From assembly GCF_006345805.1 (NCBI RefSeq), contig NW_021825489.1:1-19106 (forward strand): a stretch of 19,106 bases of DNA, given 5' to 3'. This document shows, piece by piece, positions 3,463 to 16,909 of this stretch. Made by a program: the position numbers and the translations under genes. Position 1 is the stretch's first letter, and every line of letters starts with the position of its first letter. Origin of the DNA: Octopus sinensis. Lineage: Eukaryota. The notes under the pieces were generated by a model. The model did not search any database. It was not told the origin of the DNA and saw only the letters and a list, made by a program, of their open reading frames with translations.

Positions 3463-3775
3463 GGTGTTGTTCATGGCTCAGTGGTTACAGCGTCGAGATT
3501 ACGATCGCGAGGTTGTGTGTTGTGTTCTTGAGCAAGACACTTTATTTCACGTTGCTTTAGCTTACTCACCAGTAGAAATGAGTTGTGACGTCACCGGTGC
3601 CAATCTGTATCGGTCTTTGCCTTTCCTTTGGACAACATCGGTGGCATGGAGAAGTGGGGTTGGTATGCATGGGCGAATGCTGGTTTTCCAGAAACAACCT
3701 TGCTTGGACTTGTACCTCGGAGGGTAACTTTCTAGGTGCAATCCGATGGTCATACATGACTGAAGGGGATCACCC
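3463..3775 (+). mobile_element. tRNA-headed SINE with CORE/V-type central domain, B-box region deleted
   Basis: CATGGCTCAGTGGTTA A box, then tgttgtgttcttgagcaagacactttatttcacgttgct...gtagaaatgagttg..gtcac.ggtgccaa.ctgtat. Same family as 16388-16591 (minus), which retains the B box. Confidence 0.8.
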
Positions 3776-3914
3776 TAGCGAACCGAGAAATGAATGTCAA
3801 TAAAATAAGTACCGAGATTAGTATGATCCCTGCTCGCAAAAGAAAACTCTTGAACACCGTACTTCAGCACACTTCAAACTGATGACAGAAATCAGTGACA
3901 CAGATATCACCACC

Positions 3915-4345: not shown

Positions 4346-5075
4346 ATGACTATTTATATAAGTTAATATAAACAGCAGTGAATCAGAGTAAAATTTTGGC
4401 AAAGTTTTGCATCATATTTACTTAATATATATTCGTTCGATAATCCTCCAAGGGATTAACAATTGTTAGTGAACCACAAACGGATTACTGATCAACATAA
4501 AACATGCAAACTGTTGACTTTTCGCTGAGTTTCACAGAAGATTTACGATTAACACAGATCAAAGTTTAGTCTATTTATCGCTAAATAATGACTAGGTATT
4601 AATGCTTGGAATACTTATATACATCGAAGGATATTTTCCAAATACCCACTGTTTTCATTCACAATTCTAAGTGTCAATAGCTTACAATTGAAAGTGGCGG
4701 TAGTGTTGTTGTTGTTGTTGTTGTTTTTGATTAGTTCAAGGTCAGTCATGCTCTATGAGACATAATTAAAGCCATCTTCGTGACAACTATTTGAAGCAAT
4801 GTTATTCAAATTGTCCTTCATGCTATTAAGCTGGGATATTGATATTCTTGAAGATTTGGTTACTGTTTCTAATCGTAAATGCTATTTATTTGGTTTATAA
4901 TAGTTAGGTGTAAATGCTCACATAAGTTACTCTCAAATTCTTCACATTTTTAAGACGGTATAATGTAAATTTATACGTGAATTTAATAACTATTTCTAAC
5001 GGTCAAGTGATCAAAACAATGTTTGTTTGGTTTCTAGCAACTACAAATTGTTACTCAGAAAACTTATATACAATA

Positions 5076-5490
5076 AGGCGGCAAGCTGGCAGAAACGTTA
5101 GCACACCGGGCGAAATGCTTAGCGGTATTTCGTCTGCCGTTACGTTTTGAGTTCAAATTCCGCCGAGGTCGACTTTGCCTTTCATCCTTTCGGGGTCGAT
5201 AAATTAAGTACCAGTTACACACTGGGGTCGATATAATCGACTTAATCCGTTTGTCTGTCCTTGTTTGTCCTCTCTGTGTTTAGCCCCTTGTGGGTAGTAA
5301 AGAAATAGCTATTTCGTCTGCCGTTATGTTTTGAGCTCAAATTCTGCCGAGGTCGACTTTGCCTTCATCCTTTCGGGGGCGATAAATTAAGTACCAGTTA
5401 TGTACCAGGGCCGATGTAATCGCCTTAATCCCTTTGTCTGTCCTTGTTTGCTCCCTCTATGTTTGGCCCCTTCTGGGCAATAAAGAAATA
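5076..5490 (+). mobile_element. Dimeric tRNA-headed SINE (full unit 5077-5307 plus headless unit 5308-5490) with perfect 19-bp target-site duplication
   Basis: Head ggcggcaagctggcagaaacgttagc...gagttcaaattcc; central gtcgactttgcctttcatcctttcggggtcgataaattaagtaccag (resembles the Meta/MESC-type SINE domain, from recall). TSD agaaaacttatatacaata at 5057-5075 and 5491-5509. Confidence 0.92.
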
Positions 5491-5814
5491 AGAAAACTTA
5501 TATACAATATGGAGTATTTCTCGGGAGTTTCTTTTCTCACTAACAATCACCAGGGGTTTTTTAATTACAAGTTCCCATGAGTTTAGGGATTTGGAAGCGA
5601 AAAGCGGTGGACGGAATCTGTAACAGTAGCAGATGAATTAGTTAATGTAAGGTGCATACCAACCAGCTTCCTTCAGGTTAAAAGACACAGAACAGGAATA
5701 TGGAGGACAATTGCTCACTAATAAAACTTCTTTTGGGAGCAGGAGTTCCATGTAAAAACTAAAGACAAGGCAGATGATATAAAGATTCAAATCAATACTG
5801 AACTAATCTATCAA

Positions 5815-7600: not shown

Positions 7601-7851
7601 TGCCAACTTAATGTGGCAGTCCCAGGAAAAGGAAAAGTGCTACTGCTGTTTAGCCCCAGGAAACACCGTTTCCAGTTGGCCATGTGGCACAAGCGTTCCG
7701 TGTCCTCATGTTTTCAAAGAGGGGAGATAAGCATCTCAACCCAGCAAAGCCAGCATTCAGAGACTAGTTTCAGAATCATTGCTCATCATCAGTCTGGAGT
7801 AGTATGGCCTAGCATTTTTACCTTTCCTGAGACTGCCACTTTAAGTTGGCA
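7601..7851. repeat. 251-bp unit bounded by ~42-bp imperfect inverted repeats
   Basis: 7601-7642 tgccaacttaatgtggcagtcccaggaaaaggaaaagtgcta versus reverse complement of 7810-7851 tgccaacttaaagtggcagtctcaggaaaggtaaaaatgcta. No TSD seen. Confidence 0.8.
7758..7796 (-). ncRNA. Minimal type-I hammerhead ribozyme motif (degenerate, PLE-type)
   Basis: Minus: CAGA-CTGATGA-T-GAG-CAATGATT-CT-GAAA-C-TA-G-TC-TCTG. Stem I CAGA/TCTG, conserved core, palindromic stem III ACTAGT, GUC cleavage triplet. Stem II lacks one base at its base. Confidence 0.6.
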
Positions 7852-9979: not shown

Positions 9980-10323
<344 letters not shown>

Positions 10324-10324
<1 letters not shown>

Positions 10325-11140
10325 TGTTTCTTTATTAGCCACACAGGGCTGCACACAGATAGAACAAATTACAAGGTAGAGCTTTTCTTTTGAAGGTATT
10401 AAAAAAAAAAAAAATAAAAAAAATAAAATTAAAAAAAAGGGAAGGGGGAGGTTCGATCAAAAGGGATCGTAAAAGGAGAGAAAGAGGACGAAAATAAGGG
10501 GGGTTAAAAAAAAAAAAAAGGGGGGGAGAGGAAAAAAAAATGATCAATAGGGATCGTTATCACAGAAATGTCAATAGAAGTGTAAAGTGGAGGACAGGAC
10601 AGTGAGGTTTACCCGTGGAAAGAAAGCCTGCGGAAAAGACCACGGTAACCTCGGTCAATGAAGTCACATTTTATATTTCTTTTTTTTTTTTTTTTTTTTT
10701 TTTTGCAAATAAGCAACTCTCTGTTTTCGATTTCTGGGTCATAGGACTATGCTCAAGGTGGCTTCGTCATTCATACGTGCCATTCTGGCTACATTCACCC
10801 ATCTTTTTTTAAAACATTCGCTAGACAAAACTTGCCTCTCTACTCTCACTTTCCTTTTCAAGTGGTACTTGAAGAAGTTGATGAGAGATTGACCAGAGAG
10901 GAAAGTGTTGTCTCCAATCCTTTCAGACGCGTCACCAGATACATTCTTTCGCCATGCCACAAGGATGATGAAAATAGCTCTTCCTTCCCGTTTGAAGGAA
11001 GGAGGCGTGACAATATTGACGATAGACTCAGCTGATAAACCGACTCGTCCCACACGTGACAGCAGTTGTTCGACATAAGCCCACAGGTCGGAAATTGTTG
11101 GACACTGAACGAGTGCGTGCAGAACGGTTTCGTCGCTCGC
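10324..11140 (-). mobile_element. 5'-truncated Tx1/L1-clade LINE: ORF2 C-terminus (stop ~10739) and ~415-nt 3' UTR
   Basis: SDETVLHALVQCPTISDLWAYVEQ (ETxxHxxxxC...W, distal half of the L1/Tx1 zinc knuckle), a reconstructed AKECIW-TR motif, KRWVNV...SIVL*, then a UTR with homopolymer runs and AATAAA before the (TATC)n tail. Confidence 0.8.
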
Positions 11141-11368
11141 ATATGTGAATGTATGTAAATACATAAACATATATTTGTATATATAAACGTATATATATAT
11201 AATTATATATATATGTATGTATTTGTATGTGTGTGTATGTATATGTGTATTTACATGCAAACATATGTATATATATGAACGGTGATGCTCAAGCATAGCC
11301 GCAGTCTTTGGACTGAAAAATAATACACACACACACGCACACATACACACACACACACACCACACACA

Positions 11369-12821: not shown

Positions 12822-13637
12822 TATTCTTTTCCACTATAGGCACAAGACCCGAAATTTTGGGGGTGGGGCCAGTCGATTAGATCGACCTCAGTACGTAACT
12901 GGTACTTAATTTATCGACTCCGAAAGGATGAAGGCGAAGCCGATCTCGGTGTAATTTGAACTCAGAACGTTAAGACAGACGAAATACCTATTTTTACTAC
13001 CCACAAGGGGCTAAACACAGAGGGGACAAACAATAACAGACAAACGGATAAAGTCGATTACATCGACACCAGTGCGTAACTGGTACTTATTTTAATCGAC
13101 CCCGAAAGGATGAAAGGCAAAGTCGACCTCGGCGGATTTTGAACTCAGAACGTAACGCAGACGAAATACGGCTACGCATTTCGCCCAGCCTGCTAACGTT
13201 TCTGCTAGTTCGCTGCATTTCAAGCAATAATTATTCTTTTCTACTCTAAGCATAAGGCCCGAAATTTTTGGGGAGGGAACCAGTCGATTGGATCGATCCC
13301 AATACGCAACTGGTACTTAATTTATCGATCCCGAAAGGATAAAAGGTAAAGTCGACCTCGGTGCAATTTGATCTCAGAACGTTGACAGACGAAATGCCGC
13401 TATGCATTTCGCCCGGCGTGCTAATGTTTCTTCTTTCTTTATTGCCCTCAAGGGGCTAAACATAGAACGGACAAACAAGGACGGACAAACGGATTAAGTC
13501 GATTACATCGACCCCAGTGCGTTACTGGTACTTAAGTTATCGACCCCGAAAGGATGAAAGGCAAAGTCGACCTCGGCGGAATTCGAAATACGGCTACGCA
13601 TTTCGCCCAGCGTGCTAACAATTCTGCCAGCTCGCCA
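12822..13637 (-). mobile_element. Head-to-tail array of four units of the SINE family at 5077 (A 13637-13432, B 13431-13232, C 13216-12989, D 12988-12822)
   Basis: Each unit has gtcgactttgcctttcatcctttcggggtcgataaattaagtaccag or a close variant. A and C end in tail 1 (...tgtttagccccttg.ggg...taaa); B and D end in tail 2 (...cccc.aaaatttcggg.ctt.tgc.ta.agt.gaaaagaata). A has an internal deletion of about 24 nt. Confidence 0.92.
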
Positions 13638-13644
13638 CATAAAA

Positions 13645-14540
13645 TAACAATACAGCAACAACAATGACATCAATAACAACAACAACAACAGCAGCAGCAA
13701 CAGCCACAACAGCAATAACAACAACAACTGTAATAAAAGCTGTAAAAGCAACAATAACTACCACAGCAACAGCTGCATCAGTGATAACAATAACTAGCAG
13801 CACCTGTAAAAATAACAACAACAACACAAGCAGCAACAGCAACTACAAAAACAACAACAACAGCAGCAGCAGCAGCAATGGCAACAGCAACAACTGTAGT
13901 AAAAGACATGAATGCCAACAATGATAGTAATTACCGCAAAGACTAGAATGAAACTGACAAGACAAGTTATATCAATATCGGCACCGTCTACGTCAGCGAC
14001 GAGAACGACTGCTGTAGTACCAAAGATTGAAACAAATAAAAGAAAACTTACAATAATAACAACAACGACAACAACATTAGGAAGAAGTATTACGCCCAGC
14101 AGCAACAACAATAACAACAACGACGGGAAAACAATGGAAAAGGAAAATTATATCCAGAACAGCGACATAAACAACAGCGATGAAGGCAACAACTAGAGCG
14201 GTGAGGAGAAACGGTGTAGTAATAAAAACAAAAAAAAATCAGCAAAAGCGAGAAAAACAGCAACAAAAACAACACCAATAACAACAACAACAACAACAAC
14301 AACAATAACAGCAACAGCAATTTCAATGACAGCATAAGCAATACAAATGCTACTAATAGCAGTAAATATAATAATGATAACACACTAACAAGCAAAACCT
14401 GAACAACAACAACAGCAACAACAACATGTAGAGCGGCAGTGACGGCAATGGCGGCAGTGGCAGCAGCACCATCGGCACCATCAGCAACAGCTGCAGCAGC
14501 AGCAGCAGCAGATGAGGCAACAACAGCAACAAGTAGCAAC
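13645..14540. repeat. Cryptic (CAA/CAG/AAT) trinucleotide low-complexity tract, ~900 bp
   Basis: Persistent 3-nt periodicity with stops or frame breaks in all frames. Confidence 0.85.
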
Positions 14541-15037: not shown

Positions 15038-15261
<224 letters not shown>

Positions 15262-15360
15262 GATACTCTATAGGAACCCCGAACTCACACACAAACATAC
15301 GAGTGTGTGTATATATATATATCAAATGAAGTAAATGAAAAACAGGACACAAAGGATTTT

Positions 15361-15739: not shown

Positions 15740-15748
15740 TGTGCACGC

Positions 15749-15815
<67 letters not shown>

Positions 15816-15834
15816 TGGGTGTGTGTGTGTGTGT
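15740..15834. repeat. (GT)n microsatellite
   Basis: Direct reading. Confidence 0.95.
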
Positions 15835-16135
15835 CTCTATGTGTTCTTGAGATTTTACATATATATATACTTGTTAGTTGTAACAGAGGACAGAAAACGT
15901 TAAGGCAAGACAAACATCTCAAGTCACATACATTATTATTATTGGGAAAAGATTCAAAGTCTTACAGCTGTTTCTGGGATACCCTAGAGTATGGGATAGT
16001 CTGTCATCGGAGACAAATAGGGAAAATGAGAAGGGTATAGATTAATGAAATGACAACATAAAGGACAGGAGTAAAGGAATAAGGAGATGAAGAGAAGAAA
16101 AAGGAAGCATAAAAGTTCATAGTTCAACTTTCCGA

Positions 16136-16442
16136 TCACTGGTGCCAAGCTGTATGGGCCTTTGCCTTTCCCCTGGATAACATCAGTGAACATTTCGATC
16201 TTGTAGAAATAAGTCCATAAGTTCTTTCCCTTGGATAACATCAGTGGACTTTTCCGATCTTGTAGAAATAAGTCCATAAGTCCTTAGGTGCAATCCTCTG
16301 TAAATCTATGTAGGTTAAAGTCTTACATGGATTTAAGCAGGATTACACATAAGGACTTATGGACTTACTTCTACAAGATCGGAAAAGTCCACTGATGTTA
16401 TCCAAGGGAAAGGCAAAGGCCCATACAGCTTGGCACCAGTGA
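16136..16442. repeat. Long fold-back inverted repeat with an internal 58-bp tandem duplication in the left arm
   Basis: The reverse complement of 16350-16442 matches 16136-16165 (30/30) joined to 16224-16286 (62/63). 16166-16223 is a diverged tandem copy of 16224-16282. The 63-nt centre also pairs, down to a 7-nt loop (16315-16321). Confidence 0.95.
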
Positions 16443-16591
16443 CGACGCAACTCATTTCTACAACTGGGTGAACTGGAGCAATATAAAATATTGTATCTTA
16501 GTGAAGAACACAACACACAGCGCAGATCGGGGATCGAACTCATAACCTTATAATTGTGAGCCCGTTGCTCTAACCACTGAGCCATGTGCAC
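16388..16591 (-). mobile_element. tRNA-headed SINE (family of 3463-3775), 3'-truncated at the hairpin
   Basis: Minus GTGCACATGGCTCAGTGGTTAGAGC...GAGTTCGATCCCCG (A and B boxes), then ...gtagaaatgagttgcgtcgtcactggtgccaagctgtatgggcctttgcctttcccttggataacatcagtgg. Confidence 0.85.
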
Positions 16592-16680
16592 TTACACAAA
16601 CTCCTGCGCGAGTTCGCGTGCACGCAAACACACACACACACACACACATACACACACACGAACATACACACACACACACA

Positions 16681-16836
16681 CGACGGTAGTTTACATTGCT
16701 TTCACCTAAGAAACTCACCCACAAGACATTGGCCAGTCACGGCTATCGTAACAGCCACTTGCCCTGTCTTCCACGTGTTGTGCAACTGAACCTTAAACAA
16801 TGTGGCTGCGAAGCGAACCCTTTAACCATGAAACCA
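16681..16836 (-). mobile_element. Decayed copy of the CORE-like SINE at 17841 (5' part), followed by (TG)n
   Basis: Minus ...gccacattgtttaaggttcagttgc...cgtggaagacagggcaagtggctgttacgatagcc...ccaatgtcttgtgggtgagttt...ccgtcgtgtgtg aligns loosely with 17860-18005. Confidence 0.6.
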
Positions 16837-16881
16837 TTGGAACCATTTCTTCATCTATATGTATGTGTGTATATATATATA

Positions 16882-16909
<28 letters not shown>

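What the first reader, a model, noticed from the sequence alone, without database searches (positions are those of the whole stretch)
16136..16442. ~307-bp fold-back hairpin assembled from a SINE, with a pre-miRNA-sized imperfect apex
Seen: 93-bp arms at 92/93 identity (once the 58-bp tandem duplicate is looped out), continuing through an imperfect ~28-bp inner stem to a 7-nt loop. About 55 bp of each arm is SINE body; the rest is non-SINE. The left edge is preceded by actttccgat, a copy of arm-internal sequence, suggesting microhomology-driven template switching. An intact A/B-box SINE head (16591, minus) points into the hairpin, but T4 runs at 16485-16488 and 16383-16386 could stop Pol III first. 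Known: coleoids have extensive ADAR editing and many novel miRNAs. Inference: a young dsRNA source (editing substrate, hp-siRNA or proto-miRNA) or a cruciform. Near-perfect arms around a diverged core could also mean gene conversion or an assembly artefact.
Basis: partly seen in the sequence, partly recalled or inferred. Interest (0 to 1): 0.7.

Follow-up and report, generated by a model that had tools for sequence, protein, structure and literature searches.

The report
SINE-derived fold-back palindrome in octopus DNA
A 307-bp stretch of an octopus genome is a real, nearly perfect inverted duplication of the tail half of a tRNA-derived SINE, most likely a DNA-copying accident; such fold-backs are common in octopus, and nothing here shows this one has a function.

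Summary
Window 16136-16442 is a palindrome with 92/93 identical outer arms once a 58-nt tandem copy (16166-16223) is looped out. Inside lie a 21/28 imperfect stem and a 7-nt loop (RNA fold about -212 kcal/mol, z = -22).

The right arm runs without a break into a minus-strand tRNA-derived SINE with intact A and B boxes. It is therefore the original and the left arm is the copy. This excludes a MITE insertion.

The left arm reads as a path along the reverse complement of the right arm with two backward jumps. One has CTT microhomology. The other sits at a 9-mer (TTTCCGATC) that occurs nowhere else in the 19 kb.

Mismatch density is uneven (1/93, 6/59, 7/28). This points to an older centre and outer arms that were made or homogenised recently.

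Best reading: a locus-specific product of replication or repair template switching plus slippage.

The "non-SINE" part of the arms is probably SINE-derived too. hp-siRNA is unlikely because molluscs lack that pathway. The stem is too long for a canonical pri-miRNA. Two T4 runs block Pol III. If Pol II transcribes it, it would be an ordinary ADAR substrate.

No octopus-wide DNA, reads or RNA data could be searched. Interest is low to moderate.

The parts
16136..16165 (+). Left arm, outer segment (S1-30). S is the right arm read on the minus strand, with S1 = 16442.
   Evidence: 30/30 identical to the reverse complement of 16413-16442.
16166..16223 (+). Tandem copy 1 (58 nt, equivalent to S31-89). 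It is the looped-out, more diverged copy.
   Evidence: TRF period 59, 2.1 copies. It has 5 differences from copy 2 and 6 from the right arm. Where the second SINE copy can act as outgroup, copy 1 carries the derived base.
16224..16286 (+). Left arm, copy 2 plus 4 nt (S31-93). It pairs with 16350-16412.
   Evidence: 62/63 identical to the reverse complement of the right arm. The only mismatch is 16268 against 16368.
16287..16314 (+). Inner imperfect stem, left half.
   Evidence: 21/28 complementary to 16322-16349. Its first 10 nt (16287-16296) are the 3' end of the 12-mer TAGGTGCAATCC (16285-16296), which is shared with the second SINE copy at 3733.
16315..16321 (.). Apical loop, TTAAAGT (7 nt).
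16322..16349 (-). Inner imperfect stem, right half.
   Evidence: It carries TATGTGTAATCC, 2 changes from the 12-mer shared by the left arm and the second SINE copy.
16350..16442 (-). Right arm, outer 93 nt. This is the original copy and is continuous with the SINE body.
   Evidence: The alignment with the second SINE copy crosses 16442 without a break.
16443..16596 (-). Rest of the tRNA-derived SINE: body and tRNA-like head. A box at 16584-16574, B box at 16541-16531.
   Evidence: Rfam tRNA 26.5 bits at 16519-16591 (-). Box sequences. Homology to 3514-3644. The 5' end near 16596 is approximate.
16485..16488 (-). First T4 run on the SINE sense strand, roughly 100 nt from the start of the head and upstream of the hairpin.
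16383..16386 (-). Second T4 run on the SINE sense strand, inside the right arm.
16127..16137 (+). Left-junction motif ACTTTCCGATC. It repeats the arm-internal ACTTTTCCGATC (16247-16259 and, on the minus strand, 16377-16388).
   Evidence: The 9-mer TTTCCGATC occurs 3 times in the window against 0.05 expected, and 0 of 200 shuffles reach 3.
3470..3830 (+). Second, older copy of the same SINE family, used as outgroup. Its B box is deleted. Its 3' end is approximate.

Best explanation
This is a locus-specific palindrome in an Octopus genome, made at the DNA level from one SINE.

A minus-strand tRNA-derived SINE (head at 16596-16519) supplies the right arm. The left arm is a reverse-complement copy of the SINE's 3' half.

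The copy was written by a polymerase that left its template and copied the opposite or nascent strand. That is a fold-back or template-switch mutation, arising in replication or in break repair.

Read left to right, the left arm follows the right arm's complement (S) as ...S55-66' | S3-89 | S31-121. That path has two backward jumps, of 63 and 58-59 nt. The second jump produced the 58-nt tandem duplicate at a CTT microhomology.

The palindrome has two layers. The older centre is 28 bp at 75%. The outer 93 bp are at 99%. The outer part was either added later by a second template switch primed from the old quasi-palindrome, or has been kept identical by arm-to-arm conversion. The unpaired tandem copy escaped that conversion.

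Shown here:
- the anatomy;
- the direction of copying, right arm to left arm;
- the uneven divergence;
- that the junction motif is not random.

Inferred, not shown:
- the enzymology;
- the order of events.

I infer no dedicated function. Pol III starting at the SINE head would stop at T4 runs before completing the hairpin. If the locus lies in a Pol II transcript, the 91 + 30 bp duplex would be hyper-edited by ADAR like any inverted SINE pair.
For: - The palindrome is real and far beyond chance.
- The right arm is collinear with the rest of the SINE. The alignment to the second SINE copy crosses 16442 without interruption. The left arm instead abuts unrelated purine-rich DNA.
- The second SINE copy has a single unit where the left arm has two, so the duplication is derived and belongs to the left arm.
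- The path with two jumps and the CTT junction can be read directly from the sequence.
- The 9-mer at the left junction occurs 3 times against 0.05 expected.
- Divergence is uneven. Outer 1/93 against inner 7/28 gives p = 1.3e-4. Outer against copy 1 (6/59) gives p = 0.014. Inner against copy 1 is not different, p = 0.11.
- At two inner sites the left arm keeps the base found in the second SINE copy while the right arm has changed. The template arm has therefore itself mutated in the centre but not in the outer part.
- Template switching is documented to create perfect hairpins in one step and to extend quasi-palindromes (PMC10710096).
- Octopus has the highest fraction of loci forming long, nearly perfect dsRNA and the strongest hyper-editing among 19 species (PMC5625713).
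Against: - No ancestral or orthologous empty site could be examined, so neither the event nor its order is observed.
- The template jump into S at the left junction has only 2 nt of microhomology (TC). The 9-mer does not sit where a simple one-step model would put it.
- Copy 1 is about 10% diverged while its neighbours are identical to the right arm. That needs either conversion that skipped a loop or error-prone synthesis.
- The evidence that the arm beyond 16389 is SINE-derived rests on one exact 12-mer and a 7-mer. Gapped local alignments are not significant.
- Transcription and editing are untested.
Confidence: 0.6

Rival explanations
1. Two independent SINE insertions lie tail to tail, like an inverted Alu pair. 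They were later partly homogenised by gene conversion.
For: - SINEs are very dense here: at least 2 of this family and at least 6 of a second family in 19 kb.
- The 30 nt left of the left arm weakly resemble a B-box region. GTTCATAGTTCAACTTTCCG matches the family-B B-box region at 17/20 and the SINE's own B-box region at about 20/28.
- The uneven identity fits conversion.
Against: - The B-box resemblance is not significant (p = 0.11 to 0.26).
- Retrotransposed SINEs keep their 3' ends. Here both copies would stop at mirror-image positions only 7 nt apart, with no tails and no target-site duplications.
- Both arms share private rearrangements relative to the other SINE copy.
- The left copy would also lack 84 nt of body.
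Confidence: 0.1
2. The palindrome is an assembly or sequencing artefact, such as a fold-back chimeric long read or a missed adapter.
For: Near-perfect short-spacer palindromes are a known artefact class. No reads could be examined here.
Against: - The palindrome is small, lies inside a window with normal unique flanks on both sides, and has no Ns.
- It carries a diverged tandem copy and a 75% centre. These look like accumulated mutations, not a mirror-image read.
Confidence: 0.06
3. It is a young hairpin RNA gene, either a proto-miRNA or another processed small-RNA precursor.
For: - The 81-nt apex folds at -38.9 (+) and -35.3 (-) kcal/mol, z about -9.
- Hairpins made by template switching have become miRNAs in primates (PMC10710096).
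- Octopus gained many new miRNAs (PMC9699675).
Against: - The stem continues for 91 bp without a basal single-strand junction.
- Pol III from the SINE head meets two T4 runs.
- No Rfam family reaches its gathering score. The best hits are generic long-hairpin plant families at 97 against 245 bits.
- Molluscs lack a pathway that dices long dsRNA into siRNAs (PMC12479628).
- No expression data are available.
Confidence: 0.06
4. It is one copy of a mobile palindromic family, either a MITE or fold-back element or a palindromic SINE subfamily.
For: The arms end sharply. The genome could not be searched, so copy number is unknown.
Against: - The right boundary lies inside a SINE that continues collinearly.
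- The boundaries carry no target-site duplication.
- No second copy was found in the window, in 24 kb of O. vulgaris, or in the viral, metagenome and prokaryote collections.
Confidence: 0.05

Closest known systems
Template-switch mutations (quasi-palindrome template switching; Ripley model; Loytynoja and co-workers, PMC10710096)
   Same: A reverse-complement copy of adjacent sequence creates a perfect stem in one event. It can extend an existing imperfect palindrome and leaves sharp boundaries and short microhomologies.
   Different: The copied tract here (about 90-150 nt, with a backward slip) is, from my own recollection of the primate work, longer than the typical events described there. 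I did not check tract lengths in the papers I read. The ancestral state is not available, so the event is inferred and not observed.
Inverted SINE (Alu-type) pairs as ADAR hyper-editing substrates (PMC5625713)
   Same: SINE sequence in both orientations in one locus gives long, nearly perfect dsRNA if co-transcribed. Octopus is the species richest in such loci.
   Different: Here the two arms are one SINE and its own fold-back copy, with a 7-nt spacer. They are not two insertions separated by hundreds of bases. Editing has not been shown.
Drosophila-type hpRNA loci (endo-siRNA hairpins)
   Same: A long inverted repeat with a short loop.
   Different: Molluscs, including O. bimaculoides, show no siRNA-type Dicer or Ago and no endo-siRNAs (PMC12479628). 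The processing pathway is therefore missing.
MITE-derived miRNA genes (hsa-mir-548 from Made1, PMC1784062) and palindromic transposons such as the frog Harbinger repeat
   Same: Transposon sequence that folds on itself into a hairpin.
   Different: Those are mobile palindromic families with terminal repeats, target-site duplications and many copies. This one is a rearranged single SINE copy with none of these features.
Snap-back templated insertions of polymerase-theta end joining, and microhomology-mediated break-induced replication (from my own knowledge, not checked in the literature here)
   Same: A patchwork of short templated copies, repeated cycles of dissociation and re-annealing, backward jumps and 2-3-nt microhomologies.
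   Different: Typical snap-back insertions are tens of nucleotides long. No break or repair context can be shown.

Membership tests
tRNA-derived SINE (for the element that supplies the right arm) | Internal Pol III promoter: A box (TRGCNNAGTGG) and B box (GGTTCGANNCC) at tRNA-like spacing | tested here: met
   TGGCTCAGTGG at 16584-16574 and GAGTTCGATCC at 16541-16531, 32 nt apart.
tRNA-derived SINE (for the element that supplies the right arm) | tRNA-like head recognised by a tRNA model | tested here: inconclusive
   Rfam tRNA scores 26.5 bits against a gathering score of 29. ARAGORN finds no tRNA.
tRNA-derived SINE (for the element that supplies the right arm) | Dispersed repeated copies | tested here: met
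   A second copy lies at about 3470-3830 (+), 80% identical over 131 nt, E = 6e-30. Only two copies could be seen because no octopus-wide DNA search was possible.
tRNA-derived SINE (for the element that supplies the right arm) | 3' tail and target-site duplication | tested here: not met
   None was found around 16136 or 16596. The natural 3' end appears to have been replaced by the palindrome.
MITE / fold-back transposon | Terminal inverted repeats bounded by a target-site duplication, inserted into unrelated DNA | tested here: not met
   The right boundary at 16442 lies inside a SINE that continues collinearly with the second copy. There is no direct repeat at the two boundaries.
MITE / fold-back transposon | Many copies in the genome | tested here: inconclusive
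   No other copy appears in 19 kb plus 24 kb of Octopus DNA or in non-octopus collections. The genome itself could not be searched.
Canonical animal pri-/pre-miRNA | About 35-bp stem with a basal single-strand junction and an apical loop | tested here: not met
   The stem runs 91 bp from a 7-nt loop, then a 58-nt bulge, then 30 bp more.
Canonical animal pri-/pre-miRNA | Match to a described miRNA family | tested here: not met
   The best Rfam hits, MIR2646 (97 against 245 bits) and MIR2606 (63 against 140), are generic long-hairpin matches below their gathering scores.
Canonical animal pri-/pre-miRNA | Discrete ~22-nt duplex reads with 2-nt overhangs | not testable with these tools
   No small-RNA data were available.
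hpRNA / endo-siRNA locus | Host has a pathway that dices long dsRNA (siRNA-type Dicer and Ago) | tested here: not met
   Literature only. No siDicer, siAgo or endo-siRNAs were found in molluscs, including O. bimaculoides (PMC12479628).
Template-switch mutation product | The new sequence is the reverse complement of adjacent sequence, with sharp boundaries | tested here: met
   Identity ends abruptly at 16136 and 16442.
Template-switch mutation product | The ancestral or orthologous state lacks the inverted copy | not testable with these tools
   No orthologous locus could be fetched.
Template-switch mutation product | Microhomology at the switch points | tested here: inconclusive
   CTT at the tandem junction and TC at the left junction are short. 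A non-random 9-mer sits at the left junction but not in the position a one-step model predicts.
ADAR hyper-editing substrate | Long, nearly perfect intramolecular dsRNA | tested here: met
   In silico only: -212 kcal/mol, with 91-bp and 30-bp helices.
ADAR hyper-editing substrate | Both arms transcribed in one RNA; clustered A-to-G differences in RNA-seq | not testable with these tools
   No RNA data. The window shows no recognisable exon.

The most novel reading that the evidence does not exclude
The fold-back is a very young, lineage-specific hairpin RNA locus born in one step from a SINE. It would be transcribed within a neural Pol II transcript and either trimmed into a new miRNA-like small RNA or serve as a dedicated ADAR-binding dsRNA element. 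That would be a caught-in-the-act example of how octopus gains new regulatory hairpins.
Probability: 0.06. Interest if true: 0.55.

Novelty: new member of a known kind. Interest (0 to 1): 0.25.

Why it matters
It is a clean, datable example of how one SINE copy plus template switching can create a duplex-forming locus of more than 120 bp in a genome. Octopus is known for abundant long dsRNA and heavy A-to-I editing. The two-layer identity pattern is a small natural experiment on palindrome maintenance: an old centre, young or homogenised arms, and a diverged looped-out copy. As a single locus with no evidence of expression, it does not change what is known.

Tried and rejected
External copies and context
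- I looked for other copies of the SINE or the hairpin outside the window. DNA patterns found nothing in viral contigs, JGI metagenomes or prokaryote genomes.
- A composite six-frame translation of the SINE and hairpin found nothing in the protein collection.
- Exact look-ups of window ORFs next to or over the hairpin found nothing.
- A LINE RT-like ORF (10739-11150, minus strand) gave only two sub-kilobase ENA contigs.
- To reach octopus DNA I searched with rhodopsin and fetched the O. vulgaris rhodopsin locus (L002, 24 kb). It holds the window's second SINE family at up to 96% identity, which places the window in Octopus. It holds no copy of this SINE or of the hairpin.

Ideas tested
- The inner imperfect stem as an intrinsic SINE 3' stem-loop. 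The homologous stretch of the second copy folds no better than shuffles (z = -0.45). Not supported.
- The left flank as a degenerate SINE head or B box. Suggestive by eye but not significant (p = 0.11 to 0.26).
- Homology of the arms to the second SINE family. Only the shared CTTTGCCTTTC stretch carries it, and it is marginal (p = 0.036).

Models rejected on geometry
- Twin priming and cDNA snap-back during retrotransposition. Both would place the inverted segment at the SINE's 5' end, or would not duplicate it. Here the apex is at the 3' side.
- A larger palindrome formed by the flanking (GT)n and (AC)n tracts at 15749-15834 and 16628-16681. The adjacent GTGCACGC motifs are not mirror-ordered.

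Coding content
- Pfam found nothing in five window ORFs.

Full report
**1.

Reading 15800-16900 and running the repeat finders shows two nested inverted-repeat pairs. They are 16224-16312/16324-16412 (89 nt, 92%) and 16136-16196/16382-16442 (61 nt, 95%). There is also a 59-nt tandem unit at 16165-16285 with 2.1 copies.

I then looped out copy 1 (16166-16223). The remaining left arm (16136-16165 plus 16224-16286) equals the reverse complement of 16350-16442 at 92 of 93 positions. The next 28 positions match at 21 of 28, and the loop is 16315-16321.

Both strands fold as RNA at about -212 kcal/mol (z = -22 and -25). The plus strand folded as DNA gives -128 kcal/mol (z = -24.7). The imperfect inner stem is itself far beyond chance (P = 4e-8).

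**2. What the arms are made of**

On the minus strand, 16596-16519 is a tRNA-like head.
- It has a consensus A box (TGGCTCAGTGG, 16584-16574).
- It has a near-consensus B box (GAGTTCGATCC, 16541-16531).
- Rfam scores it as tRNA at 26.5 bits, just under the gathering score of 29. ARAGORN calls nothing.

A second copy of the same element lies at about 3470-3830 on the plus strand. It is 80% identical over 131 nt (E = 6e-30) and has lost its B box. The alignment between the two copies runs straight across the palindrome's right boundary at 16442 and ends at 16389.

Three conclusions follow.
- The right arm is part of the SINE, so it is the original.
- The left arm, which abuts unrelated purine-rich DNA, is the copy.
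- The structure cannot be a MITE inserted into a SINE.

The "non-SINE" remainder is probably SINE too. The 12-mer TAGGTGCAATCC of the inner stem (16285) recurs at the collinear place in the second copy (3733). The expected number of such a match in that search space is about 1e-3 by direct count, and 2 of 500 shuffles reach it. The sequence between can be read as a 63-nt indel flanked by TGG repeats. Gapped local alignments alone do not reach significance, so I hold this as probable and not shown.

**3. Anatomy of the left arm**

Call S the right arm read on the minus strand, with S1 = 16442 and S121 = 16322. The left arm then reads, left to right, S1-89 (16136-16223) followed by S31-121 (16224-16314).
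- The jump from S89 back to S31 sits on a CTT microhomology and produced the tandem duplicate.
- The second SINE copy has one unit at this position, so the duplication is derived.
- Immediately left of the arm, ACTTTCCGATC (16127-16137) repeats the arm-internal ACTTTTCCGATC (S55-66).
- The 9-mer TTTCCGATC occurs only at these places in 19 kb, against 0.05 expected.

The left end can therefore be read as a third, partial passage over S (…S55-66, then a 63-nt jump back to S3). The two backward jumps are of similar size, 63 and 58-59 nt. At the jump into S3 itself only TC is shared. The arm also contains small internal repeats: ATAAGTCC occurs twice, and TTGTAGAAAT is shared with the SINE body at 16454-16463. 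This patchwork is what repeated dissociation and re-annealing of a polymerase produces.

**4. Two layers of age**

Mismatch density differs along the structure.
- Outer arms: 1/93.
- Looped-out copy 1 against the right arm: 6/59.
- Centre: 7/28.

Outer against centre differs at p = 1.3e-4. Outer against copy 1 differs at p = 0.014. Centre against copy 1 does not differ (p = 0.11).

Where the second SINE copy can serve as outgroup, the changes in copy 1 are derived. In the centre, the right arm has changed at two sites where the left arm keeps the outgroup base. So the centre, and probably copy 1, have aged, while the paired outer segments are fresh.

Two mechanisms fit, and they overlap.
- A later template switch could have been primed from the old imperfect palindrome and written new, perfect outer arms. 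This is Ripley-type quasi-palindrome extension. Template switching is documented to create and extend hairpins (PMC10710096).
- Arm-to-arm conversion could have homogenised the segments that can pair, skipped the 58-nt loop, and stopped where mismatches become dense.

I could not separate these two without an outgroup locus.

**5. Where the window comes from, and how unusual this is**

No cephalopod-wide DNA search was available. Through a rhodopsin search I fetched 24 kb of Octopus vulgaris (GCA_951406725.2, OX597836.1). The window's other SINE family (copies at 5075-5495 and 12822-13636) is present there at up to 96% identity. The window is therefore from Octopus or a very close relative.

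The hairpin and its SINE do not occur in those 24 kb. They also do not occur in any non-octopus collection searched.

In the 43 kb of octopus DNA available, other local inverted repeats exist: 42-nt arms at 7601/7810, and 360-nt arms at 82% in L002. This agrees with the report that octopus has the highest fraction of loci able to form long, nearly perfect dsRNA among 19 species (PMC5625713). What sets this locus apart is only its near-absence of spacer and its 99% outer arms.

**6. What it could do**

- Pol III. Starting at the SINE head, it meets TTTT at 16488-16485, before the hairpin, and again at 16386-16383, inside the right arm. No other T4 runs lie between the head and the left edge.
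- miRNA. The stem is 91 bp from a 7-nt loop with no basal junction, and no Rfam family reaches its threshold. It fails the structural definition of a pri-miRNA, although the 81-nt apex is a strong hairpin (z about -9).
- hp-siRNA. This is unlikely because molluscs, O. bimaculoides included, show no siRNA-type Dicer or Ago and no endo-siRNAs (PMC12479628).
- ADAR. If the locus lies in an intron or 3' UTR, it would be an ordinary ADAR hyper-editing substrate. In octopus most editing falls in intronic and 3' UTR hairpins (PMC9699675; PMC5625713). Whether the locus is transcribed is unknown. I saw no exon in the window.
- DNA. The imperfect centre is expected to hinder cruciform extrusion and so to stabilise the palindrome. 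This rests on general knowledge and was not tested.

**7. Verdict**

This is a real SINE-derived fold-back palindrome of private origin, best explained by template switching plus slippage with a two-stage or conversion history. It is a new member of a known kind: a template-switch hairpin, or equivalently a SINE-based dsRNA locus. No evidence supports a function, and an assembly artefact is unlikely but untested. Interest is low to moderate. The orthologous locus in sister species and read or RNA mapping would settle everything that remains open.

Noticed in passing
window 5075-5495, 12822-13219, 13232-13636: A second SINE-like family of about 180-230 bp (core ...GTCGACTTTGCCTTTCATCCTTTCGGGGTCGATAAATTAAGTACCAGT...) occurs as head-to-tail dimers and in both orientations, with at least 6 units in 19 kb. 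Copies in the O. vulgaris rhodopsin locus are up to 96% identical. It shares the 11-mer CTTTGCCTTTC with the SINE of the hairpin, and an ATAAA.TAAGTACC module with the second copy of that SINE. This hints at a common core domain.
   Followed up: partly
window 3470-3830 (+): Second copy of the hairpin's SINE family. Its B box is removed by a deletion of about 26 nt. Its 3' region is about 190 nt longer and different from that at the hairpin locus.
   Followed up: partly
window 16105-16137: The 30 nt left of the palindrome (TAAAAGTTCATAGTTCAACTTTCCGATC) resemble by eye the B-box region of both SINE families (17/20 and about 20/28). The resemblance is not significant by shuffling (p = 0.11 to 0.26). 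It could be the remnant of an older, longer left arm or of an old SINE head.
   Followed up: partly
window 10739-11150 (-): An ORF tail resembles the C-terminal part of a LINE-type reverse transcriptase. Its only relatives are two short ENA contigs, one of which carries Pfam zf-RVT. Pfam does not score the window ORF itself.
   Followed up: partly
window 15740-15844 and 16613-16682: A (GT)n tract lies left of the hairpin and an (AC)n tract lies right of the SINE. Each is preceded by a GTGCACGC-type palindromic motif. The repeat finder reports them as 62-nt arms at 89%, but the motif order is not mirrored, so this is probably coincidence between common microsatellites.
   Followed up: partly
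window 7601-7642 / 7810-7851; L002 19390-19748 / 20154-20507: Other local inverted repeats: 42 nt at 88% with a 168-nt spacer, and about 360 nt at 82% with a 406-nt spacer. They show that dsRNA-capable loci are frequent in this genome.
   Followed up: no
window 9980-10324 and 15038-15265; 13652-14511: Very long (TAGA)n/(AGAT)n microsatellites with 86 and 57 units, and an 860-bp CAA/CAG/AAC-rich low-complexity tract. No protein-family match was found.
   Followed up: no
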